Notes: generated by a model not told the origin, from the letters alone. Numbered from the stretch's first letter, positions 12,101 to 62,600 are shown. The stretch is DNA of 64,000 bases from Octopus sinensis (GCF_006345805.1 NW_021833258.1:84239-148238); one strand, 5' to 3'. A program made the numbers and translations.

Positions 12101-12940
12101 CTAGACAGTTAACATATTTGTTTCTCCCAACTTCAGTTTCGTTTACAATCAAAAAAATTTTAACAATTAAATTATTAAAATTAACTTTCACAATTCAAAT
12201 TAAATTAATTCCTTCCTCCGCAAATTCGTGGTCAAATTCTTCATGAGCACTCACGATCCTCGGAACAGTTTAGCGATTTGGCTGAACATCCCATCGGTTA
12301 AAAAAATTAAATATTTTTAAAATTTTTACTATATTGTAAATAACTCTGAATTAAAATTACATTTATTGACCCGAATCACGTCTCACAAATAACGGAAATT
12401 CAGAGTACAAAAGAACATCCGCTTGAAAATCGAAAATTGTCTTGAAAATAGAAATGAACTAAGAGATCAAAAAAGCAGAATCCTTTATGAAATAACAGTC
12501 CGGGTACGTTTAGTATGACGAAATACTTAGATGGAAAAGTCACCAAAATTGAAAAGCACTCGTCTCGGAGTCAAATGTTTATTGCTTTTGGATGTTTACC
12601 TGGGGTTTTCAAAACAGAAAAATATCGATATGGGAAGAATCGGAACACTTAATATTGGATGATGGAAATATAAATTCTCTTTTATCCAGCTCGCGGAAGA
12701 AGTGAGTTTGACACTTATGTGTTGATCGATGAAATTCGTAATTAGACAAAAATAATAAATTTGAAATAGAGGAATTTCTAGAAAACTTCAATATTAATAT
12801 TCAGAAAAACACAAAAATTGAAGATTCGATAATATGAACCGAAAATAAGTTATTTATAATAGTTGAACACAAACCAAGAGATAGCAACGAATTGTCAACT
12901 CTGATAGCCGTCACTTTTCTGCGGAAAATAAAATTTTATA

Positions 12941-13460: not shown

Positions 13461-14375
13461 AAGCATGCCTGGATTTTAAGTTATTCATTCTTGTAAGAAT
13501 AGGATATCAGTTTGGCAAAAGAAAAACGCAAATACTATTTTTAATTGACCTAATGTCCATCTTACAAGATTTTTTAAAAAATTACAGTAAATTTTACATG
13601 TTTTTACATACATTGAGAAGTACTTTAAACAGAAGGATAAAGTTAATTTAAATGTGTTAAATCATCTTGATGTGTTCAAGAATAAAGTTAATTTAAGAAG
13701 AAACATCAAAACAAATATTAAACACTAGCTCGGCAGCTCGCTTCGCTCACCGCGACCTAGCTCCTGCGGAGGGACTGTTTTCATCAAACACTATAAGTTT
13801 ATGTAGATGTATAAACTACCTGGTTTAATGTAACCCTATTCTATCGCCTGTTGATAAACGATGTTTGTCGTCCGTCCTTCCTTGGGCATATATGAATAAA
13901 TTTTCTCTTCTGCCTACCCTCGAGCATCCCACATACAGCTGTCCATGTGAAAAGCACTCACTCTCTAAAAATAACCCACTACCTTTAATGACTGTCCCTG
14001 GGCCTTGTTTATTGTCATTGCAAACTTTTTTTTTCATTTTTTTGTGTCTATTTTTTTTATATTTAATTTTTTCATTTTTTCCTTTGTAATTCCTTTTTTT
14101 TCTTTTTTTTTTTGTTGTTTTTACTGGCGGAATGGGGCAGGGGGAGATGCGGCAGGCAAGAAAAGCGACACACAAAAAAGATTTAATTAATTACCTTATT
14201 AAGCTGACCGTTTTTTCTTCAGCTTCGTTTTTCCTCCTTCGGTTATCTATTTAAAAAATTATTTTTGGAATAATAAAAAAGTTTAGGAAAGAGGCATACC
14301 GAAAATAAATTCTATCTTTACGAAAAACTCAAGTAAATAGTTAATATTTTTACGCAAATTCTTCTGATTGCGCTG

Positions 14376-14578
14376 TCAATTGGTGGTAAATGTGTTAATG
14401 GTTGTGCTAATGTGGTTTCAACTATCAAAGTGTTTTTCAAAATCTGTTAATTGCACACTCTATTCAAGGTCGTGCGTCAATTGTGGTAAAAATTGTGTTA
14501 ATGATTGTGCTAATGTGTTTCAACATCAAAGTGGTTTTTCAAAATCTGTTAATTGCACACTCTATTCAAAGTCGTGCA
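14376..14578. repeat. Two-copy ~101-bp direct repeat inside the Helitron
   Basis: tcaatt(g)gtggtaaa...aaaatctgttaattgcacactctattcaa.gtcgtgc starting at 14376 and 14477. Confidence 0.85.
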
Positions 14579-14796
14579 ATCTGTGATTGCACATTCTGTC
14601 AAAGTCAAATATGATAATAGCTTTAATTTTGATTCATGGTCGATAATGAATATGCATTTAATTTTAAAAGAAAAACATAGGATGAATTGAATTTCTTTAT
14701 CGCGAATAATGGGGAGTTCATCATTGTTAATATTCTCGCTGTCGTTTTCATCAAGGATATTCTTAATACGTGAGATTTTTGCCTTGAAGGTTTTAA

Positions 14797-16970
14797 TGGA
14801 CCTCATCATGAATGTCGAGGACATTCGCGTTGTTCATTTTAATCAAAATGCAGAAAATAATTTTTGATTTTTTGGGGGGAGGGTTTAAGGACTTCATCAT
14901 GTAAGTCGAGGACATTGTAGTTGTTCATTTTACCAAAATGCAGAAAATTTTTTTTTATTTTTTTTGGGAGGGAAGGTTTTAAGGACTTCATCATGTAAGT
15001 CGAGGACATGTAGTTGTTCATTTTAACCAAAATGCAGAAAATTTTTTTTTAATTTTTTTGGGGGGGAAGGTTTTTAAGGACTTCATCATGTAAGTCGAGA
15101 CATTGTAGTGTTCATTTTAACAAAATGCAGAAAATTTTTTTTAATTTTTTTGGGGGGGAAGGTTTTAAGGACTTCATCAGTAAGTCGAGACATTGTAGTT
15201 GTTCATTTTAACCAAAATGCAGAAAAATTTTTTTTTAATTTTTTTGGGGGGAAGGTTTTAAGGACTTCATCATGTAAGTCGAGGACATTGTAGTTGTTCA
15301 TTTTAACCAAAATGCAGAAAATTTTTTTTAATTTTTTTGGGGGGAAGGTTTTAAGGACTTCTCATGTAAGTCGAGGAACATTGTAGTTGTTCATTTTAAC
15401 CAAAATGCAGAAAATTTTTTTTTATTTTTTTTGGGGGGGAAGGTTTTAAGGACTTCATCATGTAAGTCGAGGACATTGTAGTTGTTCATTTTAACCAAAA
15501 TGCAAAAAATTTTTTTTTTATTTTGTTTGGGGGGAAGTTTTAAGGACTCATCATGTAAGTCGAGGACATTGTAGTTGTTCATTTTAACCAAAATGCAGAA
15601 AATTTTTTTTTAATTTTTTTGGGGGGAAGGTTTTAAGGACTTCATCATGTAAGTCGAGGACATTGTAGTTGTTCATTTTAACCAAAATGCAGAAAATTTT
15701 TTTTAATTTTTTTTGGGGGGGAAGGTTTTTAAGGACTTCATCATGTAAGTCGAGGACATTGTAGTTGTTCATTTTAACCAAATGCAGAAAATTTTTTTTA
15801 ATTTTTTTTGGGGGGAAGGTTTTAAGGACTTCATCATGTAAGTCGAGGACATTGTAGTTGTTCATTTAACCAAAGCAGAAAATTTTTTTTTAATTTTTTT
15901 GGGGGAAGGTTTAAGGACTTCATCATGTAAGTCGAGGACATTGTAGTTGTTCATTTTAACCAAAATGCAGAAAATTTTTTTTTAATTTTTTTTGGGGGGA
16001 AGGTTTAAGGACTTCATCATGTAAGTCGAGGACATTGTAGTTGTTCATTTTAACAAAATGCAGAAAATTTTGTTTTATTTTTTTTGGGGGGGGAAGTTTT
16101 AAGGACTTCATCATGTAAGTCGAGGACATTGTAGTTGTTCATTTTAACCAAAATGCAGAAAATTTTTTTTTAATTTTTTTTGGGGGGGAAGGTTTTAAGG
16201 ACTTCATCATGTAAGTCGAGGACATTGTAGTTGTTCATTTTAACCAAAATGCAGAAAATTTTTTTTTAATTTTTTTTGGGGGGGAAGGTTTTAAGGACTT
16301 CATCATGTAAGTCGGAACATTGTAGTTGTTCAATTTAACCAAAATGCAGAAAATTTTTTTTTAATTTTTTTGGGGGGGGAAGGTTTAAGGACTTCATCAT
16401 TAAGTCGAGGACATTGTAGTTGTTCATTTACCAAAATGCAGAAAATTTTTTTTTAATTTTTTTGGGGGGAAGGTTTTAAGGACTTCATCATGTAAGTCGA
16501 GGACATTGTAGTTGTTCATTTTAACCAAAATGCAGAAAATTTTTTTTAATTTTTTTGGGGGGGAAGGTTTAAGGACTTCATCATGTAGTCGAGGCATTGT
16601 ATTGTTCATTTTAACCAAATGCAGAAATTTTTTTTTAATTTTTTTTGGGGGGGGAAGGTTTAAGGACTTCATCATGTAAGTCGAGGACATTGTAGTTGTT
16701 CATTTTAACCAAATGCAGAAAATTTTTTTTAATTTTTTTGGGGGGAAGGTTTTAAGGACTTCATCATGTAAGTCGAGGACCTTGTAGTTGTTCATTTAAC
16801 CAAAATGCAGAAAATTTTTTTTAATTTTTTTTGGGGGAAGGTTTTTAAGGACTTCATCATGTAAGTCGAGGACATTGTAGTTGTTCATTTTAACCAAAAT
16901 GCAGAAAATTTTTTTTTTATTTTTTTTGGGGGGGAAAGTTAAGGACCTCATCATGTAAGTCGAGGACATC
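14797..16970. repeat. Tandem array of ~94-bp units, about 24 copies
   Basis: Unit aaggacttcatcatgtaagtcgaggacattgtagttgttcattttaaccaaaatgcagaaaa-T7-9-aa-T7-8-G5-8-aaggtttt. Inner copies differ almost only in homopolymer length; first and last copies are diverged. Confidence 0.98.
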
Positions 16971-17522
16971 GTATTGCCAATTTGAAGTTGTGTGCACACA
17001 CAGACAGACACAGACAGAACACACCCATACCATTTTATTATTAAGAAGAATAAATGATTTTTTAAAGGAACTTTGTGTCTTCATTTTTATTAACTTAATT
17101 TTCCAATTGATTTTGTTGGTTTTTGCTGATACTCCAATTTGTTCTTTATTTTTAATTTAACAAGTCCCAACTGTTTTCTAAGAGTTTTTGCCTACGGTTC
17201 AAGACTCCTGCAAGTCTAGTGTAGATGACGATACCACATCCTTGCACTTTAATGTCAGGGATTTCAGCTATATTTAATTATTTAGGTAATATTGACTGCT
17301 TCCATTAATAAGTATATTTAATTATCGCAGGGTCGTGGTCAGTCTTTTTTGTTTTTGCAAAGGAAAGAGTCTTTCTTATGTTAAAAAATACTTTCAGTAA
17401 AAATAAATCGTAAACATAATAATGGTACTTTGATCCTATTTCCCGATTAATGCCTCCTTAATTTGATTAAATTCCTTAATATTTCTGACGTAACCCCTAA
17501 ACCCAGGCATCAAAAAAATCTA

Positions 17523-20037
17523 TGTCACCGGCTGGATAATGCCCTGGGTTGGATAATGCCTCCTCAACGTTATTTTAAAAAAATAAATATTTTTTCAAAT
17601 TAATTTTGATTAGATTTTTTGATTTTCTTAATTATTTTAGTAGTTTATCAAAGTTTTTTTTCAAATTAATCTAGCGTGCAAATTTATTTTGGTTATCTAA
17701 GTTTTCCAATTTGAAAAATAATAAGTATAATTGATCAAATCTATATTTCAAAAATGGTTTTACTCAACCTTACCAAAGATGAACTTGAAGTAATCAAAAA
17801 TATTCAAATAGATGTTTTTTATATGGACCGATTGCAGATTTAGTGGATTTAAGAAGGTATGCTAGCCTTAATAGCGATAATGGATGGCTATTTCTTTTTG
17901 TATAAATTGTAGTTGGTTGTGGTTATAGACTCATGTTCTAAATTCGCAGTTGTAAAACTTGCCAGGCGGAAATCAGCGGAGGAAATTAGTAGAAAATTAA
18001 AGAATATTTTTTACATGATTGGTCGCCCATTTATTCTACAGACGGATAATGGGAAAGAATTTAAGAACAAATGTATGGAAACAATGTGTAATGATCTGAA
18101 AATCATACACATAAGTGGACGCCCTAAAGCACCATGGATTCAGGGTCATGTAGAAAGGCAAGTTATTTGTAAATTTATCTTTAGATTCAATCAATCGATC
18201 AAAAGGTGGATTAGCTCAACTAGTGCCTCAAATGGGTCTTTTGGAAGCTATAAAGACTTCTATCAAGAAATCGTTTATAAATATAACATGGCGAAGCATG
18301 AAACGACCAAGAGGACACCTTTCGAAATTTTTATGGGAGGAAATAAGATCGGCGTTATTGTCATTCGATGGAAATGAAGCGGTTGAATCAAGTCAATCGG
18401 AGATAATTGGATCTGATTATTTCGAAAACGAGGACGATTGTTTGAATCAACAAAGTGTGTATGAAAGCCATGTTTTCGCCGGAGAAAAAATGAAAAGGAG
18501 GCGGAAATGGAAATTTAATGAAGATTTATCCGTAGGAGATAATGCCCTACTGAGACATGATATTGATGCAAATCCAAATAATCGAAAATGCCCCTATACG
18601 ATCAGATCGATTCAACTATATATGAAATATCGGAAGTTGATACAGACACGTGCGCACTTAAAGATCTGAATGACGAATCATCCAAAAATGTACACAAAAG
18701 TCCTATAAAAAAATATGAATCTTATAAAAAATTTTTATATAATAAAAATTCATGAATTTTTAATATTTGTTTTTAAATGGTAGACCTAAAAAATTGTATA
18801 ATTATAATAAAAAACGTTATTGATTCGGAAAAATTGGTGATGCCGGTTTTTGCTGACTCTTGGAAAAATTCATTCAATCAAAAAATTGATAAAAAATTGA
18901 ATAAATCGACTTAATTTCATTATCAAGTTATTTTTAATTAATTATCAGGTTATTTTCGTTTGATTTTAATAAAATTTTTAAGGGGGTATTATCCAACCCA
19001 GGGCATTATCTAGCCCAGGTGTTCTCAACCGGGGGCGAATCGCCCCCCTAGGGGCGAAAATTTTGTACAAGGGGGCGATAATTTTGTACAGGGGGGCGAT
19101 AATATATTTAATAAAAAATAAAATTTATATTTATTAAAAATTGTTTAATTAGAATATTTTTAATGGCAAGCCTAATAATTTAGACTCAAAATTTAATGAA
19201 ATTACTATTCTTCTTCAAGGAAATTTTGTCAACATGATTGATTGCAAAAGAATAATGAAAACATTTGAAAAAAATTATTGCTTTATCGACATAATTTTTC
19301 TAAAATCAGTTTGGAAACATTTCACAACTATCTGAGATAAGTAAATATTTTAGTCAAAACAATATTTTGACATATTGTCAACATTTGACGGAACTAGAAG
19401 CGGATATATCTCTTAGATTCAAAGATTTGTTTGATTTGGAATTTGAAGCATGGATGATTGATCCGTTTTCATGTGTGCCAGAAGATATGAACGAAACAAT
19501 CCAAGAAGAGATAATTGAATTTAAATATAATGAAGAATATATTCACAGATTTCAACAGGATGGTATCTCTAAATTTTGGCAATCAAAAGATCTACAAATG
19601 AAATTTCCAAATTTATGGAAGGAAATGAGTAATGTACTATTGACATTCCCTACCACTTATTTGGTTAAAAGTGGATTTAGTTTTGTCAATCATAATACAC
19701 AATGTGAAAAAAATAGACTGGAAGTGTGTTATAGAGGCGATATACGCCTAAAGTTGAGCAGAATTAAACCCGACATAGAATATTTAGCGAGAGTAAACAT
19801 CAATATCAAGGGTCTCACTAATAATTTTAATAAAAATTCAATTTTTACATTTGATTTATAATTTTATATTTTGATTTTTGAGTTATGTACAAAAAACAAC
19901 CAATTAAGGGACAATGCCAAAAAATTTTTAAATTGTAGGTGGACAAGGGGGCGATAAAATTTCAAAGGGGGGCGACAAAATATCTAAGGGGGCGATGAAC
20001 AAAAAAAGGTTGAGAATGCCTGATCTAGCCTGTGACA
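17523..20037 (+). mobile_element. Ginger/TDD-like DNA transposon (rve integrase), internally deleted, both ends present
   Basis: TGT...ACA termini. TIR TGTCAC(C/A)GGCT(G/A)GATAATGCCCTGGGTTGGATAAT. 5-bp TSD ATCTA (17518-17522, 20038-20042). Integrase core VVIDSCSKF...LQTDNGKEF...QGHVER-FNQSIKR with a 27-nt GC-AG intron at 18158-18184. Confidence 0.85.
19016..20022 (+). mobile_element. hAT (Buster/Charlie) deletion derivative inserted in the right TIR of the Ginger element
   Basis: TIRs caggtgttctcaacc / ggttgagaatgcctg. Exact 8-bp TSD ATCTAGCC (19008-19015, 20023-20030). ORF 19367-19861 carries the hAT C-terminus (LLTFPTTYLVKSGFS...RGDIRLKLS). Confidence 0.92.
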
Positions 20038-24790: not shown

Positions 24791-24862
24791 TCCCCGTTCG
24801 TCTAGGGGTTAAGATACCGGCCTTTCATGCCGGTGACCCGGGTTCGAATCCCGGACGGGGAA
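24791..24862 (+). tRNA. tRNA-Glu (anticodon TTC)
   Basis: Acceptor TCCCCGT/ACGGGGA; anticodon stem CCGGC/GCCGG with loop CTTTCAT; T arm CCGGG-TTCGAAT-CCCGG; 72 nt; T4 run just downstream. Confidence 0.93.
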
Positions 24863-24879
24863 TAATTTTATAAATTTTA

Positions 24880-26090
24880 AATTGAGGTAGCTTTTTTCTT
24901 TCTGCTGATTATATGGTTCTTAAATGATCCAGATTCATCCATAACTATTCCAAGATATTTTAGATTTTTCTCGGAATTTATTACTCCAATGTCAATGGGA
25001 TCACGTTCCCTCTGTAATTACCAATCCAGGCAACAGTATTTTTTTAAAAGATAAAGACAAGCCTTTATTTTTACACCATCTTGCAATCTTTTTAATATGA
25101 CCAAGAGTTTTTTCCATGACATTGATTTGCTCATGGAAAGATCCATAAGTAAAATTTTTTTAGGAAGAAAATATGAAAAAGTTAACACGAGTTTATAAAG
25201 AGCCTGGAGGTCAGCTCAAAGACGCCGCGCTGCGTATCGAATGACAGTTTCCACGGAGCACCGAGACCGAGATTCGCTGGAAGAGCCAGCTCGTCTCCCT
25301 CCGGTCGTTGGTCTTCCTGGCAATCCTCCTGGCAATGTCGGAAAGGATGCGAGTCGCAGACCTGCCGACGATTCCAGATGTTTCGAAGGGGAGGGGGACA
25401 AACTCGTAAGAGTCCGAAATACCTCCATACTTCGACCTCTTAGCCTCCTCAGCCTGAGCACTCGCAGAACCCGGGTTAGTGATAGACTTGAGTAACATCG
25501 TCGCTGAGAACGAGTCAACACAAGTTGCATAAGTAAAATATCATCTACATAAATGATCATCTCCATGTTAGGATGATCCACTTTAGGAATGTAGCACATC
25601 ACACAATTGAATAAAAGGACTGATTACAGATCCCTGTGGAACTCCTCTCATAAGCGAGATTTTCTTCTACAATTGATTTCCTACGTGTATGAACGATTCT
25701 CTTACCGGGAGGAAACTCTTCATCCAAACTAACGCCATCTTTCTGATATTTTAATTGTATAAAGTTTGTAATAACACGGCATGCCAGACACTGTCAAACG
25801 CTTTTGATATGTATAGACATGCGGCAGTAAGATATTCTTTTTTCTTCTGTTCAGTATAAATAGCCTCCTTTAGTCGCGAAAAGCAATTTCCAGTGCCTCC
25901 GTTACGGCGAAAATCCCATTGCGCATGCACACGGTATTGATTATCTTCAATATAAGTTGATAATCATTCAAAATAATTTTTTCCATGATTTTTGAGATTG
26001 CGCATATGAGGCTAATTGGCCTGTAATTCGCAGGATCCGAACTCGGCCTGCCCTTCTTCGGGATCATCCAAACAATTGTTCTCTTTCACG
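24880..26090 (-). mobile_element. APE-type LINE RT (family of 43038-44254), decayed and interrupted by a CRE fragment
   Basis: MIPKKGRPSSDPANYRPISLICAISKIMEKII; IIYVDDIL; SKYLGIVMD. The RT reading resumes on the far side of the 25208-25495 insert. Confidence 0.75.
25208..25495 (-). mobile_element. CRE-like retrotransposon 3' end (endonuclease C-terminus)
   Basis: AEEAKRSKYGGISDSYEFVPLPFETSGIVG...WLFQRISVSVLRGN. Confidence 0.8.
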
Positions 26091-26185
26091 TTTCGGGGAC
26101 ATGCCCGGTTCTCCACGAAGAATTAAATAATTTCCATGGTTAATATAATAAAGGCATTTCACGTGGCGGACCTCATTAGTTGATA

Positions 26186-26275
26186 AAGTTGTTGTTCATT
26201 TTAACTAAAATGCAAAAAATATTTTTGTAATTTTCTTTGCAAGAAGATTTTAAAGATTTCATCATCAAAGATATT
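26186..26275. repeat. Solo diverged copy of the 94-bp Helitron array unit
   Basis: gttgttgttcattttaactaaaatgcaaaaaatatttttg...aagattttaaagatttcatcat. Confidence 0.7.
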
Positions 26276-26699: not shown

Positions 26700-27400
26700 G
26701 AGGAACGATTGTCTGGATCCACAAAATTCGTAGGTGCTCAGAGTAAACGAACGATTCAAGTCCATTGTACGCAGACTATTGGTCGGTGCATACAATTGAT
26801 CCTGGAAGAAACGAAACGAAAAATTTTTATTTAAAAAGGCTGTTAATAGTATAGATATGGGCAAACTGGGACAGGCAAGACATATACCATGGCGGGATGT
26901 GGTTCAACAGACAAAGATGACAAGGAAGGAATAATTCCACGGGAAATTGCCTCAATTTTTCAAAAAATAGCGAATTTTGTATTTGTCTATAATCATTGAA
27001 GGGTTCAAGGTGTTTTATAGTAAAGATATCGTTCATTGAATTGTTTAACGAGGAATTGGTTGATTTATTGTTGAATGAGTCAAACAAATTATATATCTAC
27101 GACGATACTATTAACAAAGAGGCAGTTATCGTTAAAGGAGTTAAAGGAATGGAAATTTCTAGTCTTGATGAATTTTGATGCCTTTTTAAACTAGTAGTTT
27201 TTAAATGGAAAACATGTTCGATCACATCGAATGAGCGATCAAGGTTTTTTGACATGATTTTATAATACAGTCGGTCATTTTTACTATCAAAGTGTATATT
27301 CGGACTGGAAGGTCTAAGGAAATATTGAGAGTCGGGAAATTTAATTTGGTCGATTTAGCAAGGTCAGAAAATATAAATCGAACAAATTCTAATTCTCACC
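26700..27400 (+). pseudogene. Kinesin motor-domain fragment (kinesin-5/BimC-like)
   Basis: P-loop YGQTGTGKTYTM, GIIPR, SFIELFNEELVDLL, VIVKG, SSRS, GKFNLVDLA(R)SENI. 23-nt intron at 26979-27001. In-frame TGA, small deletions and a G-to-R change in DLAGSE. Confidence 0.85.
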
Positions 27401-27559
27401 TAAATGGTAAGGAAACCTTGTTAATGTATTGCAATTTTTATTAAAAATTTATACGTAAAGGACTGAAAAAGGAAAAATTCTCATCGAAAAAATATAAAGC
27501 ATAGAAAACGTCTCCAAGATAAAAGAACACAACATTAGGCACATTATCCCTGTGAGACT

Positions 27560-28930
27560 TGGTCTGATGTGGTCTTCGTGGGGTTGTGGCAATGCAAGAG
27601 TTTACGGACTCTTCTGGTCGATTTGCGTTGTCCGAGCAGGTGGGGTCCGCCACATTGCCGTTGGAAACTACTTCAGAAAGCTAGCAGCTAAAATTGCATG
27701 GAGCCTTGCCTGTTCGAGAATATCTGATGAATTTACCCCTCCCAACTTGGAGTTTGTGTAAAGAACAAGGTGATTTTTCATACAGAAAAAAATATTTAAA
27801 ATTAATTATTTTCAATATTTATATTGATAATTTATGATAGATGTTTTTAGTCTCGCGATCTAATTGTATAGCAAAAATTCGATTAGAATAAATTAGTCAT
27901 TAATAAAAAAATTCTCTCAACAATGTTTACAAATAATCAATGCCATCAATTCACTTCTAAAGGATCAAGTCTTCACTTGTTATTGGGGAAAAGATTATTT
28001 TTCTGAAACTGAAATTTAACAAGCGACCCTCTTGAACACTTCTTTTTGCTTTGGCAATTGATGAATGTTAAATAAACAAAAAATTATTTTTATTGGAACT
28101 TAATAAAGTAACGAATTTTCTTTTTTTGCTTTGGCAATCGACGAAACTGTCCGCTCTATCAGCACGGAGCTGAACCTCTGGTATCTTGATAATGTTACGA
28201 TTGGAGGACCGGGGAAAAAAGTTTTTGACGCCCTGTCACAAGTCGTGACTGCACTACGAAAAATCGGATTTGATGTAAATATAAATATCACATAGAGGGT
28301 GCCCACTAAGCGAAAAGGAACTGCGGTGCCATCTACTGCAAAAAATAAGAAACTTTCTAAGTTACGGGGGAACTCTCCTTACTCAATGTTTATACTGCAT
28401 TTTTCCTTTTGAAAAATAGAATTGGCTTGCCTAAACTACAATACGTTCTCCGGTGATCTACTTGCTTTGAACATCGGGACATCCTACACTTACTGGATAG
28501 GACTTTTAGAAATTCAGCTGAAGCGCTCTTGAACATCCACTTCAACAAATCTGGTTGTAATCAAAGCAAGCTTTCTACACGCGCCAAGACTGTCGAACCA
28601 AGACTGTTTTGTCTGTTTGCTTTCTAGGTCTCAAAACGGGAGGGGTGATGGCTCCACGCATTTCCACAGTACATTCGGTGCTCTTATGGACGACGATTGT
28701 GAGATAATCGATGTTGCACAACGTCTGGGTCTTGACGTTTGTGAGGAACACAGATGCCGGACGTGACAATAGATTACTATTTTATTACTCCGCAAGGTCG
28801 GGGCCAAAATCTCCATTTCCACTCACTATCCTCGGGAGGTGGACTGGGTTCTTCAGTGGTTCTCGATCGCCGTTATCCGGAGGAACAGTTTGGCAATCCG
28901 CCAGGGTGCTGGCCTTTCCTTCGATTATTT
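27560..28930 (+). mobile_element. Fragmented CRE-like retrotransposon
   Basis: GGVRHIAVGNYFRKLAAK (27630-27700); LNLWYLDNVTIGGP (~28170); LGLDVCEEHRC (~28730); C-terminus RKVGAKISI..VDWVLQWFSIAVIRRNSLAIRQ (~28790-28900). Confidence 0.75.
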
Positions 28931-29044
28931 TTTTATCACTTTTGCTTGAACTATTATTTGAAGTTTTTATCACTTAAAATCTAATTAATGCTGTTTAAAA
29001 GAATTGAAAGCTTACTCGTCAAAGATTAAGATACAAAATGAGAA

Positions 29045-31989: not shown

Positions 31990-32700
31990 CGGGGCTATTT
32001 TCTTCTCTTCTCTAGGAACTTTTGGAATTGGGTTTCAACAAGCTCGCCAATCATAGGAAGACTTCGCGCCAGCTCGGTATTTTCTCTCTTAGATTTACGC
32101 CAAAGGCCACCTTGAGCGCTAATCTCCTCGTTTTCTCCAGCAGTTTTATAATTCTTGCCTTGGAGGGGGACAAAATCCACCCTTCCAGCCCATACATCAG
32201 TACTGGAAGGATAGCTGCCAGAAAGATGAATAGCACAGTATCTGGGGGTAGGCGGAATTTGATCATTCGATCAAACGCAATCAATTTGCACTAATTGCTG
32301 GTGACCTTAATTCTGGCTGTTAAAAAGAAAACCGAGATGGAAAAATCCTGCGGGCTGTATCCGATCAAGTTGGTTTTGATGTTTGGACATCGAAAGAGCC
32401 AAATCATTTTTTCATGCCATGGGGATGATTTCTTAGGGCTGTTCCTAACTTCACCCTCATTGAAGCTCCTATGTGAACCTCCGAGGAAAATCGAAGACAT
32501 CGGCAGCGATCATGCCACCCAGATGATGACTATAATGTTGCATCCGACATTAATGGAGGATATTTTTTTGCACTATAGAACTTCAAAAACGGACCGACTG
32601 ATCACCTCAAAACATTAACATCCAGCAAACTTTGTTTCAAGAGAAACAAACTAAAGAGAAGTTAAATCCTCAAGGAAAAGAACCCAAATAAAAGGTTACT
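31990..32700 (-). mobile_element. APE-type LINE RT C-terminal fragment (family of 43038-44254)
   Basis: ILPVLMYGLEGW...KLLEKTRRLALKVAFG matches VQPLIIYGSEGW...KLEKTRRFAIKLAFG. Confidence 0.75.
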
Positions 32701-32869
32701 TATAGCAAATTAGGCTGTTGAAATGATTGCAGGATTCACAAGTCGATATAAAATGGCGAATAACTTTTTGACTGACACCAATATATTTTTGGGAAATTAA
32801 ATGGCACATTTTGGTAACACCTGGATGTCCGATAGAGTGTTCTTTAGTTAAAATTGAGTTAATTCTAGC

Positions 32870-33524
32870 TTCTTAAAAAGAGCAGACAACAGTACGGAAA
32901 TTTCCATTATGTGCAAAAAATAATTCTCCATTTACTAGTTGTAGATTCTTACATCTTCTGCGCAACGTCCGCTTTCGATTTTCAGTGAAGTCATCAGGAT
33001 AGTGATTATATTCAACATAGTTCATAATGTTCTTTAATTCATCAGGAGTTTTAATGCTGAACGAAGAAGGCATAACAAATATCAAGATAAAGCGTGCAAT
33101 TTTATTTTTTTAAAAATAATTTTGAAATAATTTATCAGTAATACTTTTAACTAAATTAAAAAAAATAAATCGAAAATTTTTTTAGGGAGAGGAGGTCATG
33201 GAAGTGAGGACCACATCTTCGAGGACTTTCTCAGCAACGCTTTTAACTAAATTAAAAAAATAAATCGAAAATTTTTTTAGGGAGAGGAGGTCGTGGAAGT
33301 GAGGATCACATCTTCAAGGACTTTCTAAGTAATGCTTTTAACTGAATTGAGCAAAAATAAGTCGAAAATTTTTTTAGGGAAAGGAGGTCGTGGAAGTGAG
33401 GAACACATTTTCGGGGACTTTTTCAGTAGCACTTTTGACTAAATTGAAAAAATAAGTCGAAAAATTTTAGTTGGTTAATGTTTTCAAATGATCAGTCGGT
33501 TTTATCAGCCCGGACGCTATGACA
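32870..33524 (-). mobile_element. 5' end of a Ginger-like element (terminus, tandem repeats, N-terminal ORF)
   Basis: Minus strand starts TGTCATAGCGTCCGGGCTGATAAAACCGACTGATC at 33524. ORF 32873-33085 (NYVEYNHYPDDFTENRKRTLRRRCKNLQLVNGELFF) resembles the N-terminus of gypsy-integrase-like transposases. Confidence 0.62.
33136..33467. repeat. Tandem repeat, ~96-bp unit, about 3.4 copies
   Basis: Unit starts at 33136, 33232, 33327 and 33424: cagcaacgcttttaactaaatt...cgaaaatttttttagggagaggaggtcgtggaagtgaggaccacatcttcgaggactttct. Confidence 0.95.
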
Positions 33525-33542
33525 TACGACAATTAATATCGA

Positions 33543-34140
33543 TTAATCATAGGGAAAGCCAGAGGCCTGGCGGATCGCCAAACTGTTTTCCCGGATAACG
33601 GCGATTGAGAACCGTTGCAATATCCAGTCCAGCTCCCGAGGATCGTGAGTACGCATTGAGATTTTGGCTCCGAGCTTGCGGAGGAACTTTTCCGTCTTTG
33701 GACCAAGAGCACCCGACGTCTCCACCGCTATCGGAACCACGAAAAACTTTTCCGAAAGGGCAGAATATTTGGAAAGCTTTAGATCTTCAGCCTTCTTAGC
33801 AGCTGATTTAGCCTCCAGAGCACACGAGGTTAGATGTGAAGCAGAAAAAGTGTCCCAGCAGGTTGCGTCCCATACGAGACCTTTTCCGCCCTCAAAAGGG
33901 AAAAGGGTCATTCCGTCGGGACGTTTCCCGTCACCGCGGTCAAGACCTGGTGGTTCGAGAACCGAAGGAAATCCCGCCGAGTCGAGGGCCCTCCGTATGA
34001 TGTCGTTCATAGCAGAGTGCCTCGGGAAACGTCCGGCGCTCCTCCTGCACGATAAAGGATGCAGACCGAAAGGGTCAACAGTGCAGCCACAGCGACACGT
34101 ATGCGGGACACATTGCCTTAGTCCAGGGGTAGGCAAAAGC
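33543..34140 (-). mobile_element. CRE-like retrotransposon C-terminus (CCHC knuckle plus PD-(D/E)xK endonuclease)
   Basis: Open 197-aa ORF: CRCGCTVDPFGLHPLSC...RHSAMNDIIRRAL...KRPDGMTL...WDATC...AVETSG...QRFSIAVIRENS. Confidence 0.9.
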
Positions 34141-35095
34141 AGGCTCGCGAGCCTTTGAAGGCTCTTTAACTCTTACGGTAGGCTCTTTCAATTTTTAACT
34201 ATTTTTTTGTTTTGTTAATAACAAAAAATCTTTGCACGTTTAACATTAATTTTTTGTGGTACATCGATATATGCCTAGCAAGAAAAAATTAATAAAAAAT
34301 CGATAATGCGCGACATTTTCAATCAAAATGGACTGAAACTTTTGCATTCACGTCTAATTCAGAACAACTACCGAAATGTCTCATTTGCCAGGAAACTTTG
34401 AATCAAAATAAAAAGTCAAATTTAGAGAGACACTTTAACACAAAACACTCAAATTTCGCCAAAAAATATCCAATTGATGATTCCCGAAAGAAAGCTGTAG
34501 AAGAACTTGCAAAGAATAATCAGTTCGAGAATTCTGCTTTTAAATGTTGGTCTGACAATGCCAGGACTGCAAATATTGCCAGTTTTTTGATAAGCCACGA
34601 GATCGCATAAAGGGGAAAACCATTTACCGATGGCGAATTTATAAAGGCATGTTTCATTAAAATTTCCGAAGAACTTTTTCACGATTTTTCAAATAAGGCA
34701 GAAATCGTGAATAAGATAATGAATATACATTTATCTGCGAAAATAGTAGCCGACAGGACTTTTAAGATGTCTTCGAATGTATCTGTTCAACAAGTTTCTG
34801 ACATGAAATTGTCTAATTCAATTTCAATAGCAATAGATGAATCATGTGATATAAATGACATTGCACAAGTATCATTGTTCATGTCATACTTCGGTGTCTC
34901 TGTTTGTTCGTTATGTGTCTCGAGGTTTCCTGAGGCAAGAACTTTTGGCATTATTGCCTCTAAAGGGTCAAACCCGTGGTGAAGATCTTGTTGGCGCAGT
35001 CGTAGAATATTTTGAAACGAATTATATTCCTCTTAATAAAATCGTTTCAATTTCAACTGACGGTGCTGAAAGCATGCTGGGATCGAGAAAGGAAT
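34140..35095 (+). mobile_element. hAT (Spin/GTF2IRD2-like) transposase 5' half
   Basis: KCLICQETLNQNKKSNLERHFNTKH; GKPFTDGEFIK; SIAIDESCDINDIAQ; ELLALLPLKGQTRGEDL; SISTDGAESMLG. Ends at a junction with a CRE 3' scrap (35095-35160). Confidence 0.88.
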
Positions 35096-35249
35096 TCAAA
35101 GGATCCTGTTGGCCGTTGTGCGTGGGAACAGCTGTTCCATCCGGCTTGCTGGCCGATTAATTTCTGATTAATTTAACTTTCCTTGTCTTGTTGAATGTCT
35201 AAAAAAATGTCTATTTAATTTTATGAATTTAAATTTTTGACAAGTGGTA

Positions 35250-53641: not shown

Positions 53642-55059
53642 ATGCTTGCAATCAGTGCTCCTTGTTGGTTTTCAATTCAACGATTCATTTCTACTACCAC
53701 CGGGACAATTTACCGAGAAAGAAGACGTCGACTCATCCAAAACATCAGTCTGACTCACAATGGAGACATCATGGCCATCATCCCCTCATCCACAACTCAA
53801 TACTCCGCCCCCGACGTACCCCATCCCTTCAGACAGAACATGAATTATTTTTATCTAACGGGACACGACCAACCAGATGCACTCCTTGTATGTACTCTCA
53901 CAAATAACACATTCAACGACTATTTGTTCCTACCACCATTCTGCCCTAACAAACTCCGCTGGGAAGGACCTTCTCTCACATCGAGGAACTCAGCAGAGTC
54001 ACTGGAACTCAGCAAAGTTTTGGATTTTTCAGAAATAAAATCATTTTTGTGGTCACATGAACATTGTCACGTTTTTATGGACAATTTAGAATCATCCTGG
54101 CTACTAATAGCCCATGATTTGAATGTGGGGGACAAGAAATGTATTTCTCCCTTTATTAGTGACATGCGGATAAGAAAAAGTGACTGGGAGGCCTCAAAAA
54201 TGGCCAAATCCTCGCATATTTTGGGAGAGGCATTGAAAATAGTGATGAACAAATCAGTAAAGGAAATGGTTGGATTATTAAGTCAGTAAAAGATGTCGGA
54301 ATATCGAATAAAAAGTGAATTGAGTTATCAATGTGATTTACTGGGGGGTGAAGGATTTGCCTTCCCGCCAGTGGTGGCATGTGGGGATAATAGCACAATA
54401 ATCCATTATATGAAGTATAAGGGAGAGTTCAGACGGGGGGAGTTGATATTGGTGGATAGTGGATGTGAGGTGGGTCACTACTGCAGTGATATGACAAGAG
54501 TGTGGCCTTCTTGTGGTGAATGTGGTCAAATATTAAAGGAGTGTTTTCCCGTGCTCAGAGGGAGGTGTATGAATGTGTGTTGGAGGCCAATTTGGAGTGT
54601 ATTGAGGCATTTAAAAGACAAAATTCGCTTAATTTTGTCAATGATTTGATGTATCAGGTCTTGGCTGATAATTTGATCAAAAGGAAGGTTATGAGGACAT
54701 CCAGTCATTTAGTCCCCTCTGTAGTAATAGTTATGAGGAGGGCTAGATTGTGAAGAATGTTTTGTGTCCTCATCATGTGTCGCATTATTTGGGGTTGGAT
54801 GTGCATGATACGGATTCTGTGAGTAGGAATGTGCCTGTCCAACCAGGATTTGTTGTGACAGTCGAGCCTGGTTTTGTGTTTGTTGTGGATGTGTTTAGGA
54901 TTGTACATTTCTCGGGATTGTGGTTATGTTTATGACGAATATAGGGGTATAGGTATAAGGATTGAAGATGATTTGTTGATCACACAGAATGGAGGTCATG
55001 TGCTTACTAGTAATTGCCCTAAGTACGTGGATGATATTGAGGACTTGTTGTGTGTTTGA
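53642..55059 (+). CDS. XPNPEP3: Xaa-Pro aminopeptidase 3 (Icp55 orthologue), 438 aa, 5 exons
   Basis: Introns 54269-54292, 54516-54538, 54721-54746 and 54871-54898 give a 1317-nt open frame. [12 protein letters not shown]; metal ligands in LVDSG...[25 protein letters not shown] and IRIEDD. Confidence 0.95.
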
Positions 55060-59999: not shown

Positions 60000-61320
60000 C
60001 GCAAACGTAAAAACGTCATCGAGATACCAAAGATTTAGTGGGGAAGATATAAGTTTGGTCACCTCAGAGATTCCAAAACAGAAAAGGAGTGGTCCCAGAG
60101 GGTTTCCATATTGAACTTGCCTGTCTCCAACCCATGTCGTCGAAAGGGGAATTGCATATGTTCTGAGTACAGGTGCGGATAAGGTGGTCAATGGCGGAAA
60201 GTCTCTCTGGAAAATCAAAACACGGAAAAGAGCGTAGCAAATAGGAGAGCTTTTGGATTGAAAAGCAATTCCGTAGGAGAAATAATGCTGTGTGTGAGTC
60301 CAGCTGTATGATACGATCAAAAACTTCCTCGAGAAAGAGTTCTTTTTTGCGTAGGGCCACATCGATAGAGTTGCCAGCCACCGGGGCTCCGAGGATAAAA
60401 AGTTCGTCTATGGGAGTAGATTGAACTCCCGGGATAAGATTGCAGAAAGAGGAAACAGCGTCTTCAAAAATAGATTGCGAGCATCCGAGGTTGGAAATTT
60501 CACATTTGGAGAAATTTAAAATGAGGCCGATTTTCTCCAGAGCCGGAATGATTTTAATTATGTCCTGCAGGACGATGTCCGGAGGGCCACCGAGAGTGGC
60601 GTCGTCGAGATACCAGAGGTTTAATGGAGAAGATAGAAGCTTGATCACCTCGGAGATTCCAAGACAGAAAAGGAGTGGCCCCAGAGGGTCTCCCTGTTGG
60701 ACTCCCGAAGCAGACGGGATAGTGTCGGAATCAAAGATAAGAGAAGATGGTTGGCCGTATGATTGGAAAGTTAGCCCAAATAAAGAAGGACAATACTCAG
60801 AGCAGTCCTCCAAAACTCGGTCCCGTCGAATACTGTTGAATGCATTTCTAAGCTTGATCAATATGTTTGGATATGGGGATTCCTGCACGCATCTGAGAAT
60901 GTGCGGATTGCATGAACTGCATATTCACATCCTCCTGGCACGCCGACTTCGAGTTGGACTGGGCTGAGTTTTGGTGGGGATTATTTTCTTGCATGTGATC
61001 ATGGCTGCAAGCCGACTGCAATTGATTGCTTCGGTCTATGCCCAGACATGAAGAACAATTCCAGATGGAAATAGCAGACATTGCTCTCTTGGTCATTTTG
61101 GCACAGGACATGTGGGAATGATTTGAACAAGTTGCGCAGTAAATCCATTGTTTTCGACTGTTTGAAATGCTGCAAGCTCTTCTTATAACGAGAGCTCTTC
61201 TTATAACGTCGTTGAGAGCTGAATGCCTCGGGAATCTACCAGCGCTTTTTCGATAAGAAAGATAGTGAAGTCTAAATTGATCAATCGATGCACCACAGCG
61301 GCATTTGTGTGGTTCACAAA
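60000..61320 (-). mobile_element. CRE-like retrotransposon mosaic (CCHC scrap, PHD finger, RT)
   Basis: [17 protein letters not shown]...WNCSSC (PHD); NAFNSIRRD...GVQQGDPLGPLLF...WYLDD. A second related RT piece lies at 60000-60125. Confidence 0.88.
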
Positions 61321-61324
61321 CTTT

Positions 61325-62600
61325 GAGATGCACGTTTGATACTGTTTCTCCATTATCTTTATTAATAGTACACGTAGTTTCAAATTTTTCTGAAACTGTG
61401 TACTTATTTATATCCAGTTCGTCATATAATGGGTATCTACGGTTACCAGTGTTATCATCCCTGTCGTGTTTCAGCAGCACTGTATCTTCAATTTCAATGT
61501 CTTCTGCGTCATATTTCCACTTACGACGTTTTTTAATTTTCTCTCCAGCTTTAACAAGGTTTTCATGCACTTGTTTCTCAGTTCTTTTATCGTCATTTTC
61601 AAAATAATTCGAACTTGACTCATCACTTTGTTCTGGATTTGTTCCGTCGAACATTAACAATGCATTTATTTGATCTTCTGTTCTCTACGAATCTCTTTTA
61701 TCCCCCATAAAAATTTTGAAGGGCGCCCATTTCGTAGTTTCATGTTGTGTAGTGTTATATTTGTATACAATTTCTTGATAAAAATCCTTGAATTTCCCTA
61801 GCATTCCGTTGTATGCACTTGTAGAGCTAATCCATCTTTTAATTGATTGATTAAACCTACAAATAAATTGACTATAAGGAACCTCTCCACTTGCCCCTGA
61901 ACCCAGGGTGCTCTAGGTCGTCCACATATATGAGTGATGTTTAATTCGAAGCACATTATTTCCATGTATTTATTCTTGAACTCTTTCCCATTGTCTGTTT
62001 GCAAGATAAACGGGGGTCGGATTGAGAAGAAAATTTTTTTAACTTTCTTGTTATTTCTTCGGCTGATTTCGTTTTTGCAAGTTTTACCACTGCAAATTTG
62101 GAAAAGGAGTCGATTACAACAACCAACTATGACTTATTCAAAAAAAGACCCATCCATAATTTCTGTTAAGGTTTGAATATCTTCTTAGATCCACTAAATC
62201 TGCAATATACCGATCTCTAGGTCCTTTTGCAATTATGGGGGTGATAGTTGGTTTTGTTGCCATGAAATTTTTGACTAACACTGATTAACAACATTACTTG
62301 GCAATAGACACATTTTGCTATCACACTACAAATTTCTTCCCGTGTTATCGAATATATTTGGTCTCTTAGTAACGAGAGCATTCTGTCTCTACCAAAATGA
62401 GTATTCATATGCTCGATCTTCAATTGTTTTGAAATGGATACCTCAATAATTTTTAACTTTAGCTCACTTTCTTCTAGAGTAAAAAACGCAGTTTTTTATT
62501 TCCGACTTTTATATACGTTTTTTCAGGAACTTTGAAGCAAAAACGATTTTTAAGCGTCTTGAGCCTTCTCCTGTTCTCTTTATCGTATATAGTAGTGGTG
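61325..62600 (-). mobile_element. Ginger-like integrase/transposase, most complete copy, intron-containing
   Basis: HMNTHFGRDRM...CVYC (H2C2), IADLVD, VVIDSFSKF, QTDNGKEF, QGQVER-FNQSIKR. Microintrons at 62297-62275, 62149-62127 and 61882-61857. Confidence 0.87.

What the first reader, a model, noticed from the sequence alone, without database searches (positions are those of the whole stretch)
33136..33467. Same ~95-bp repeat module at the 5' ends of two unrelated transposon superfamilies
Seen: the 96-bp unit in the Ginger-like 5' end (33136-33467) and the 94-bp Helitron unit (14797-16970) share period, orientation relative to their elements (both minus strand, subterminal 5') and layout: T-run, G-rich run, AGGAC, TCGAGGAC, exactly 14 nt, then TTTTAACYAAAWT and an A-tract. 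Sequence between the motifs has diverged. A solo copy lies at 26186-26275. Inference: a portable cis-module (promoter, host-protein site or nucleosome-phasing unit) exchanged between or captured by different TEs, with motif and spacing under constraint. I know of no description of this.
Basis: partly seen in the sequence, partly recalled or inferred. Interest (0 to 1): 0.7.

Follow-up and report, generated by a model that had tools for sequence, protein, structure and literature searches.

The report
Related 95-bp repeats in two transposons
Two tandem arrays of about 95 bp, one inside a rolling-circle (Helitron-type) transposon remnant and one just inside the end of an integrase-type (Ginger-like) transposon, are probably distant relatives, but nothing shows that the shared motifs are a selected "module" rather than leftover similarity between satellite-like repeats that ride in transposons.

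Summary
The sequence-level observation holds. Array A (14786-16973, 94 bp x 23) and array B (33131-33468, 95 bp x 3.5) lie in the same orientation. They align over the whole unit at about 60% identity and share TCGAGGAC-N14-TTTTAACYAAAWT. The match beats shuffles (0/400, 3/600, 1/600), and the two arrays are reciprocal best nhmmer hits (E 0.03 and 0.13). Homology is probable, not proven.

Array B really sits in a Ginger-like element. It abuts a 62-bp terminal inverted repeat (TGTCG...) that recurs at both ends of a related element in an Octopus sinensis assembly contig. It lies 57 bp upstream of an integrase-like ORF with an H2C2 zinc finger.

Array A looks like the central repeat of a Helentron-type non-autonomous element. 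A (GTCT)n microsatellite lies 25 bp from one end, and a Helitron helicase tail with a CTAG end lies nearby. Its termini were not found.

The "module under constraint" reading is not supported:
- The related Ginger-like copy has no array.
- TCGAGGAC is intact in only one of three B units.
- The solo copy (A-type) has lost the motif.
- The lengths of the matching blocks fit uniform divergence.

Best reading: diverged members of one satellite-like repeat family carried or captured by transposons. This is a known kind of thing with a modest cross-superfamily twist.

The parts
33131..33468 (-). Array B: 3.5 tandem units of 95-97 bp, 84-88% identical to each other. It lies between the Ginger-like 5' inverted repeat and the integrase-like start codon.
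   Evidence: TRF; the repeat finder D5/D6; sequence; nhmmer.
33470..33531 (-). 5' terminal inverted repeat of a Ginger-like DNA transposon. It starts with TGTCG (the TGTNR pattern), 12 bp after the stop codon of an upstream LINE ORF.
   Evidence: blastn to L006 19286-19332 (83%) and, on the opposite strand, L006 27632-27677 (85%); alignments; TGTNR rule from PMC2836005.
32699..33074 (-). Integrase-like N-terminal ORF (ATG at 33074) with an H2C2 zinc finger and an in-frame stop at 32873-32875. No DDE core follows.
   Evidence: Pfam Integrase_H2C2 E 2e-6. HMMER relatives start at the same N-terminus and carry H2C2 + rve without RT. 86% nt identity to L006 19540-19881.
32593..32619 (+). Probable remnant of the 3' inverted repeat (inner 27 nt). 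If real, this copy is an internally deleted derivative of about 970 bp.
   Evidence: blastn-short, 89% over 27 nt, inverted relative to the 5' repeat, E 0.003; sequence. The outer 30 nt are not recognisable.
14786..16973 (-). Array A: 23 tandem units of 94 bp, nearly identical to each other. Most differences are homopolymer-length indels.
   Evidence: TRF; the repeat finder D1-D4 (42 of 55 indels are homopolymer-type).
16998..17023 (-). Eroded (GTCT)n-type microsatellite, 25 bp from the high-coordinate end of array A. This is the position of the left-flank microsatellite in HINE / DINE-1-like elements.
   Evidence: TRF; sequence; (GTCY)n in HINE left flanks per PMC7492417 and PMC4067079. It is the only microsatellite of this type in the window.
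14375..14577 (.). Second tandem repeat (102 bp x 2, 91%), 200 bp from the low-coordinate end of array A.
   Evidence: TRF.
14201..14225 (-). Candidate 3' palindrome, AAGCTGA-N11-TCAGCTT, downstream of array A.
   Evidence: Script. It is a candidate only. The flanking inverted-repeat candidate (17024-17066 / 14250-14287) is not above chance.
13828..14004 (-). Helitron helicase C-terminal fragment (...FSHGQLYVGCSRV...).
   Evidence: Best PDB hit is Helraiser residues 1430-1461 of 1496, E 0.07, followed by PIF1 helicases. It is below the Pfam reporting threshold.
13725..13765 (-). Helitron-like 3' end: a GC-rich hairpin ending in CTAG, followed by T.
   Evidence: Sequence; DNA fold -12.2 kcal/mol, z -2.2.
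26168..26270 (.). Solo, decayed A-type unit (about 1.1 units), lying beside a 5'-truncated LINE RT fragment.
   Evidence: RVT_1 fragment.

Best explanation
Arrays A and B are two old, diverged branches of one family of satellite-like tandem repeats with a monomer of about 95 bp. The family travels inside transposons.

Array A is the central tandem-repeat block of a non-autonomous Helitron/Helentron-type (HINE-like) element. It was amplified or homogenised recently.

Array B is a short, older array (units 12-16% apart). It lies directly inside the 5' terminal inverted repeat of a truncated Ginger-like (integrase-type) DNA transposon.

The sharing arose at the DNA level. Possible routes are capture of neighbouring sequence during rolling-circle transposition, template switching or repair synthesis, or recombination between arrays. 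Local expansion by unequal exchange or slippage followed.

The common blocks (T-run/G-run, AGGAC, TCGAGGAC-N14-TTTTAAC) are residual identity. No function is needed to explain them.

Shown: the arrays, their similarity above chance, the Ginger-like terminus, and the absence of the array in a related copy. Inferred: common descent, the HINE assignment of A, and the transfer route.
For: Similarity of A and B:
- Full-length, collinear, same-orientation similarity at about 60% identity that beats three kinds of null.
- Reciprocal best nhmmer hits.
- Near-equal periods, 94 and 95, among only three long-period arrays in the window.
- The flanks of the two arrays are unrelated, so the unit occurs in two different carriers.

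Ginger-like carrier of B:
- The inverted repeat is shared with both ends of the L006 element.
- The ORF carries an H2C2 zinc finger.
- Its relatives are stand-alone H2C2 + rve proteins.

Helitron-type carrier of A:
- Array A is flanked by a (GTCT)n microsatellite, as in HINE left flanks.
- A Helitron helicase tail and CTAG end lie nearby.

No sign of constraint:
- The related Ginger-like copy has no array.
- The motif is degraded within B and in the solo copy.
- Match-run lengths fit uniform divergence.

The literature describes tandem repeats as regular cargo of Helitron/Helentron elements, with the same array types inside and outside elements and across different Helitron elements (PMC7492417, PMC12628747).
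Against: - Homology rests on one pair of consensus sequences with marginal E-values (0.03 and 0.13). blastn sees nothing.
- No intermediate monomers were found.
- No other genomic copies of either array could be fetched. The metagenome scan gave only chance hits, and protein searches on an array-A-encoded ORF and on the integrase-like N-terminal ORF next to array B found nothing.
- The termini of array A's carrier were not identified. Its candidate subterminal inverted repeat is at chance level.
- There is a weak, non-significant trend for shared positions to vary less among B units (P 0.086). That trend is in the direction expected under constraint.
Confidence: 0.55

Rival explanations
1. Chance resemblance. 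Two unrelated AT-rich repeats of about 95 bp, each with T, G and A runs, happen to align. The motifs were picked after the fact.
For: - Individual nhmmer E-values are only 0.03-0.9.
- blastn finds no A-B match.
- A few nulls reach the observed score: 3/600, 1/600, 1/600 and 4/600.
- The motif was defined from the two arrays themselves.
- Block lengths are as expected for randomly placed matches.
Against: - The score lies 3-3.8 sd above every null, including shuffles that keep homopolymer runs.
- The hits are reciprocal best, full length, in register and in one orientation only.
- The best hit falls in an array of the same period, which covers only 3.4% of the window.
- An exact TCGAGGAC-N14-TTTTAAC match is expected about 1e-4 times per window (own estimate: 15 specified bases against about 128,000 positions on both strands).
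Confidence: 0.2
2. The unit is a portable cis-acting module: a promoter, a host-protein binding site or a nucleosome-positioning unit. The TCGAGGAC-N14-TTTTAAC core is kept by selection, and different transposons acquire the module because it helps them.
For: - The spacing is exactly 14 nt in all three complete B units and in the intact A units.
- Array B lies between the inverted repeat and the ATG, where a promoter would be.
- There is a weak trend to fewer changes at shared positions within B (P 0.086).
Against: - A related Ginger-like copy (86% identical ORF, same inverted repeats) has no array.
- TCGAGGAC is intact in 1 of 3 B units, and the solo copy has lost it.
- Run-length and variability tests are not significant.
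- Array A's carrier has no ORF to drive.
- The two transposon types use unrelated enzymes, so a shared transposase site is unlikely.
- No RNA family matches either array.
Confidence: 0.1
3. Array B is simply a piece of a Helitron/HINE array that landed in this one Ginger-like copy by nested insertion or repair filler. It is not a feature of the Ginger-like family at all.
For: - The related Ginger-like copy lacks the array.
- The window is a dense graveyard of nested transposons.
- Helitrons capture and spread tandem repeats (PMC12628747).
Against: - No HINE left or right flank, microsatellite or Helitron terminus accompanies array B. It abuts the inverted repeat within 1-2 bp and runs into sequence homologous to L006 about 50 bp before the ATG.
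- B is about 40% diverged from A. Any donor was a different, old subfamily.
Confidence: 0.1

Closest known systems
HINE / DINE-1-like non-autonomous Helentrons with central satellite-like repeats (Cg_HINE and pearl in oysters, DINE-TR1 in Drosophila)
   Same: - Array A is a central head-to-tail array.
- A short, eroded (GTCY)n-type microsatellite lies just upstream of the array in the element's sense.
- A second tandem repeat follows in consecutive order.
- Palindrome candidates lie downstream.
- The host is probably a mollusc: the nearest relative of the neighbouring transposon is in an Octopus sinensis assembly.
   Different: - The subterminal inverted repeats and the termini could not be shown (the candidate is at chance level).
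- The monomer is 94 bp. (From memory, not checked here: many oyster families have monomers of about 150-170 bp.)
- A canonical Helitron 3' remnant (helicase tail, CTAG) lies next to it, and its relation to the array carrier is unclear.
Ginger DNA transposons (Ginger1 and Ginger2/TDD; Bao, Kapitonov and Jurka 2010, PMC2836005)
   Same: - The transposase is integrase-like, with an N-terminal region and an H2C2 zinc finger.
- Relatives are stand-alone H2C2 + rve proteins without RT.
- The terminal inverted repeats are about 60-80 bp long and begin with TGTNR (TGTCG).
- The insertion site is AT-rich.
   Different: - The window copy lacks the DDE core and most of the 3' inverted repeat.
- A 4-bp target-site duplication could not be confirmed (TTAT against TTAA in L006).
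- Neither the Ginger paper nor the GingerRoot paper mentions tandem repeats in these elements.
Transposon-borne tandem repeats that seed or share satellite DNA (Tetris in Drosophila virilis, DTC84 in Donax, the Cg170/HindIII-pearl link)
   Same: - A short array sits inside a DNA transposon next to its inverted repeat.
- Related monomers occur in arrays of very different length and as single monomers elsewhere.
- The edge units of the array are more diverged than the inner ones.
   Different: - The described cases link arrays within one transposon family or superfamily, or to free satellites.
- Here the two carriers belong to mechanistically unrelated superfamilies: rolling-circle against DDE integrase-type.
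Subterminal transposase-binding repeats of hAT, CACTA and Mutator elements
   Same: Repeated units lie just inside a terminal inverted repeat.
   Different: - Those motifs are short (6-20 bp), present at both ends and conserved across copies.
- Array B is at one end only, has 95-bp units, and is absent from a related copy.

Membership tests
Ginger DNA transposon | Integrase-like transposase with an H2C2 zinc finger | tested here: met
   Pfam Integrase_H2C2 E 2e-6 at 32699-32872. 124 HMMER relatives.
Ginger DNA transposon | DDE (rve) catalytic core in the same ORF, with no RT or RNase H | tested here: inconclusive
   The window copy stops after the zinc finger, and no rve domain follows. Relatives P0004, P0007 and P0008 start at the same N-terminus and are H2C2 + rve only. 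L006 has an rve gene inside the same inverted-repeat pair.
Ginger DNA transposon | Terminal inverted repeats of about 40-270 bp | tested here: met
   L006 19256-19335 and 27600-27690 are inverted copies of window 33470-33531. Only a 27-nt remnant of the window's own 3' repeat is found.
Ginger DNA transposon | Termini follow TGTNR | tested here: met
   TGTCG at window 33531 and at both L006 ends. Rule from PMC2836005.
Ginger DNA transposon | 4-bp target-site duplication | tested here: inconclusive
   The L006 flanks read TTAT and TTAA, a 3 of 4 match. The window's 3' end is not defined.
Canonical Helitron | Rep/helicase ORF | tested here: inconclusive
   Only a helicase tail of about 60 aa is present. 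The best PDB hit is the Helraiser C-terminus at E 0.07. There is no Pfam hit and no Rep domain.
Canonical Helitron | 3' CTRR end preceded by a hairpin, with insertion before T | tested here: met
   CTAG at 13725-13728 followed by T. GC-rich hairpin, z -2.2. The support is weak.
Canonical Helitron | 5' TC terminus after A, with array A lying between the two termini | tested here: inconclusive
   No 5' end could be located in 16974-17522, and no second copy was available for comparison.
HINE (non-autonomous Helentron) | Central satellite-like tandem repeats | tested here: met
   Array A, 23 x 94 bp.
HINE (non-autonomous Helentron) | Short (GTCY)n-type microsatellite in the left flank, upstream of the array | tested here: met
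   GTCTGT/GTCT run at 16998-17023 on the minus strand, 25 bp from the array. Criterion.
HINE (non-autonomous Helentron) | 11-15 bp subterminal inverted repeats, plus an internal complementary repeat in the left flank | tested here: inconclusive
   The best candidate, 17024-17066 / 14250-14287, scores no better than shuffles: 229 of 500 reach its score.
HINE (non-autonomous Helentron) | Palindrome near the 3' end | tested here: inconclusive
   Perfect 7-bp stem at 14201-14225 and 8-bp stem at 14574-14592. Without a defined terminus, their position cannot be judged.
Satellite-like repeat family | Head-to-tail monomers at several loci, with diverged subfamilies | tested here: met
   Two arrays and one solo monomer lie in 64 kb. 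The A-B relation holds at P of about 0.002-0.01.
Satellite-like repeat family | Genome-wide abundance and long arrays | not testable with these tools
   The source genome is not in any searchable DNA collection. The metagenome scan gave chance hits only.

The most novel reading that the evidence does not exclude
A unit of about 95 bp with a conserved TCGAGGAC-N14-TTTTAAC core is a genuinely portable cis-element. It would be a binding platform for a host or silencing factor, or a promoter or insulator. It would have been acquired independently by a rolling-circle element and by an integrase-type DNA transposon, and kept by selection next to their 5' ends.
Probability: 0.08. Interest if true: 0.6.

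Novelty: new variant of a known kind. Interest (0 to 1): 0.3.

Why it matters
If the homology is real, this is a concrete case of satellite-like monomers crossing between two mechanistically unrelated transposon superfamilies: rolling-circle Helitron/Helentron-type and Ginger-type. In that case transposons spread repeat families, and also pass them to one another. It also records a Ginger-like element with a subterminal tandem array, which the Ginger papers I checked do not mention. It does not, as it stands, reveal a new regulatory element.

Tried and rejected
Searches that gave nothing:
- blastn self-comparison sees no A-B match.
- A harsh local alignment picks up only T-runs.
- The two arrays' flanks are not alike, and they match nothing else in the window or in L006.
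- Word-indexed protein searches with the integrase N-terminus and with the array-A reading frame found nothing.
- Exact-protein look-ups of two window ORFs found nothing.
- The metagenome scan for TCGAGGAC-N14-TTTTAACYAAA returned 5 single, non-repeated matches in GC-richer contigs. All are chance.
- Rfam gives no family for either array. A whole-window scan finds only a tRNA.

Ideas considered and rejected:
- Array B as the 3' UTR of the upstream restriction-like-endonuclease LINE. The Ginger-like inverted repeat begins 12 bp after the LINE stop codon, and a second LINE copy has no array.
- The LINEs as site-specific inserters into the unit. No unit sequence lies on the far side of either LINE.
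- The solo copy as an A-B intermediate. It is A-type, 20 sites against 6.
- Both arrays in one element family. The flanks are unrelated, and no Ginger inverted repeat lies near A.

Left unresolved:
- The empty site of the Ginger-like insertion could not be reconstructed.
- The HINE subterminal inverted-repeat candidate is at chance level.

Full report
THE WINDOW

The window is AT-rich (about 33% GC) eukaryotic DNA packed with nested transposon remnants:
- reverse-transcriptase fragments, a pogo-type DDE_1 domain and a hAT dimerisation domain;
- integrase cores;
- a few host-gene pieces: an aminopeptidase-P N-terminal domain, a kinesin motor exon and a tRNA-Glu.

OBSERVATION

TRF finds exactly three long-period tandem repeats: 102 bp x 2 (14375-14577), 94 bp x 23.4 (14786-16973, array A) and 95 bp x 3.5 (33131-33468, array B).

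On the + strand both units read: T-run, G-rich run, AGGAC, TCGAGGAC, 14 nt, TTTTAACYAAAWT, A-rich tail. The pattern TCGAGGAC-N14-TTTTAAC with up to 2 mismatches occurs 20 times. All 20 lie inside the two arrays, against 0.15 expected. A solo, decayed unit lies at 26168-26270.

IS THE A-B RESEMBLANCE MORE THAN CHANCE?

- blastn does not see it. A strict local alignment only finds T-runs.
- A cyclic global alignment of the two consensus units gives 59-61 identities in about 100 columns, score 6.
- Dinucleotide shuffles give -7.7 +/- 3.6; 0 of 400 reach 6.
- Shuffles that keep every homopolymer run intact reach it 3 of 600 and 1 of 600 times.
- Random genomic 95-mers reach it 1 of 600 and 4 of 600 times.
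- The reverse, complement and reverse-complement controls score -13, -9 and -5.
- With nhmmer, the B profile's best non-self hits in the whole window are all A units, nearly full length and in register (E 0.03-0.5). After the solo copy, the A profile's best hits are B units (E 0.13, 0.9).

With only three long-period arrays to compare, and near-equal periods, I take common descent as probable (P of chance about 0.002-0.01). The identity is only about 60%.

WHAT CARRIES ARRAY B

Read on the minus strand, the region has this order:
1. the end of a LINE ORF with a restriction-like-endonuclease type C-terminus (stop at about 33543);
2. 12 bp;
3. TGTCGTATGTCATAGCG...;
4. array B;
5. 57 bp;
6. an ATG (33074) that opens an integrase-like N-terminus with an H2C2 zinc finger (Pfam E 2e-6), one in-frame stop, and no DDE core.

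A full HMMER scan of 1.8 billion representatives found 124 relatives. Several are stand-alone proteins that begin at the same N-terminus and carry H2C2 + rve and nothing else. That is a Ginger-type transposase.

The top hit (76% identical) is the C-terminal exon of XP_029653923.2, 'clathrin heavy chain 1-like [Octopus sinensis]'. I made an alignment that included this protein, which allowed it to be retrieved. Its locus L006 was then fetched.

Comparison with L006 (blastn):
- Window 32715-33056 is 86% identical to L006 19540-19881.
- Window 33474-33520 matches L006 19286-19332.
- In the opposite orientation, window 33470-33515 matches L006 27632-27677.

L006 therefore holds a related element with both terminal inverted repeats, and window 33470-33531 is the 5' inverted repeat (alignments). 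It begins with TGTCG, the TGTNR pattern given for Ginger termini (PMC2836005). A 27-nt inverted remnant at 32593-32619 (E 0.003) suggests that the window copy is a deletion derivative of about 970 bp.

Array B is truly subterminal.

The L006 copy, however, has no array. About 190 bp of AT-rich sequence lies between its inverted repeat and its ATG. TRF finds nothing there, and nhmmer finds no unit.

WHAT CARRIES ARRAY A

On the minus strand, downstream of the array, lie:
- the 102-bp doublet;
- an A-rich tract;
- a 60-aa helicase tail (FSHGQLYVGCSRV), whose best PDB match is the C-terminus of Helraiser (E 0.07);
- a GC-rich hairpin ending in CTAG followed by T.

Upstream, 25 bp from the first unit, lies an eroded (GTCT)n microsatellite (16998-17023). 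A short (GTCY)n microsatellite just upstream of a central satellite-like array is the signature layout of HINE / DINE-1-like non-autonomous Helentrons in molluscs and insects (PMC7492417; PMC4067079).

I therefore read array A as the central repeat of a Helitron/Helentron-type non-autonomous element. The weak points are these:
- Its termini were not found.
- The best subterminal inverted-repeat candidate is at chance level.
- The palindromes cannot be placed without a terminus.
- The flanks of A and B share nothing, and no Ginger inverted repeat lies near A.

A second, unrelated Ginger-like piece (rve core 17913-18374, + strand) lies 550 bp away, inside its own inverted-repeat pair.

IS THERE CONSTRAINT ON THE MOTIFS?

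I found none.
- Within B, TCGAGGAC is intact in 1 of 3 units (the others read TCAAGGAC and TCGGGGAC). TTTTAAC reads TTTTGAC in one unit.
- Positions shared with A vary among B units in 7 of 61 cases, against 9 of 34 for unshared positions (Fisher P 0.086).
- Given the overall identity, identical blocks of 8, 8 and 7 are unremarkable. P is 0.48 for the longest block and 0.08 for the two longest.
- The solo copy has lost TCGAGGAC and the G-run. It is A-type, not an intermediate.
- The related Ginger-like copy does without the array.
- Array A's carrier has no ORF to drive.
- The open frames through A shift every unit, because 94 is not a multiple of 3. They are not coding.

MECHANISM

The best-supported reading is a satellite-like repeat family with a monomer of about 95 bp whose branches ride in transposons.
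- A is a young or homogenised array. Its units are nearly identical, and many of the differences look like homopolymer-length noise.
- B is old (units 12-16% apart).
- The A-B split is older still (about 40% divergence).

Transfer between carriers is inferred. Routes named in the literature include capture during rolling-circle transposition, aberrant rolling-circle replication and recombination between arrays (PMC12628747). That review also reports the same array types inside and outside elements and across different Helitron elements.

Rivals are chance (0.2), a selected cis-module (0.1), and a one-off landing of a Helitron-borne array piece in this single Ginger-like copy (0.1).

COMPARISON AND NOVELTY

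Tandem repeats as transposon cargo are well described. What is less usual is that the two carriers belong to unrelated superfamilies, and that a Ginger-type element has a subterminal array. Neither Ginger paper that I searched mentions tandem repeats. I rate it a new variant of a known kind, of modest interest.

LIMITS

- The source genome could not be searched at the DNA level.
- The key tests are genome-wide monomer phylogeny, flank classification and per-site rates. They remain to be done.

Noticed in passing
L006 19538-19885 (GCA_006345805.1, VCDQ01000492.1): The RefSeq model XP_029653923.2, 'clathrin heavy chain 1-like [Octopus sinensis]', ends in an exon that is the N-terminus of a Ginger-like transposase. 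It is a transposon-derived chimeric gene model. Its clathrin part also looks diverged from bovine clathrin by eye in the alignment and is shorter (1380 aa against about 1675).
   Followed up: partly
window 33531-33546: The Ginger-like element is inserted only 12 bp after the stop codon of a LINE ORF with a restriction-like-endonuclease type C-terminal domain (CCHC ... RPDG ... WD.T). That domain has no Pfam match. Diverged copies of it lie at 25214-25540 (-), 28773-28946 (+), 12213-12263 (+) and 60848-61660 (-).
   Followed up: partly
window 17523-19022: A second, different Ginger-like remnant: an rve core (17913-18374, +, Pfam E 8.6e-8) and a C-terminal region, lying inside a 52-nt inverted-repeat pair (17530-17581 / 18964-19015). 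It starts about 550 bp from array A. A 74%-identical copy lies at 61694-62206 on the other strand.
   Followed up: partly
window 14786-16973: Most length differences between array A units are single-base changes in homopolymer runs (42 of 55 indels). This looks like long-read assembly noise rather than real variation. The first unit, at the low-coordinate edge, is clearly more diverged than the inner ones.
   Followed up: partly
window 14375-14577: A separate 102-bp x 2 tandem repeat (91% identical) follows array A after 200 bp. This is reminiscent of HINEs that carry two consecutive arrays.
   Followed up: no
window 34296-35157 (+): A hAT/ZBED-like fragment (weak BED / C2H2 zinc-finger hits followed by a transposase-like stretch) is nested in the LINE upstream of the Ginger-like element.
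   Followed up: no
window 53642-54286 (+), 26993-27441 (+), 24791-24862 (+): Host-gene pieces among the transposons: an aminopeptidase-P N-terminal domain ORF (AMP_N, E 1e-21), kinesin motor-domain exons with rather diverged sequence, and a tRNA-Glu(TTC).
   Followed up: partly
L006 19256-19350: In the L006 copy, the 5' inverted repeat is followed by an inverted duplicate of its own first 20 nt or so (CCGGACACTATGACATACGA). This would form a long hairpin at the element's end. The window copy lacks it.
   Followed up: no
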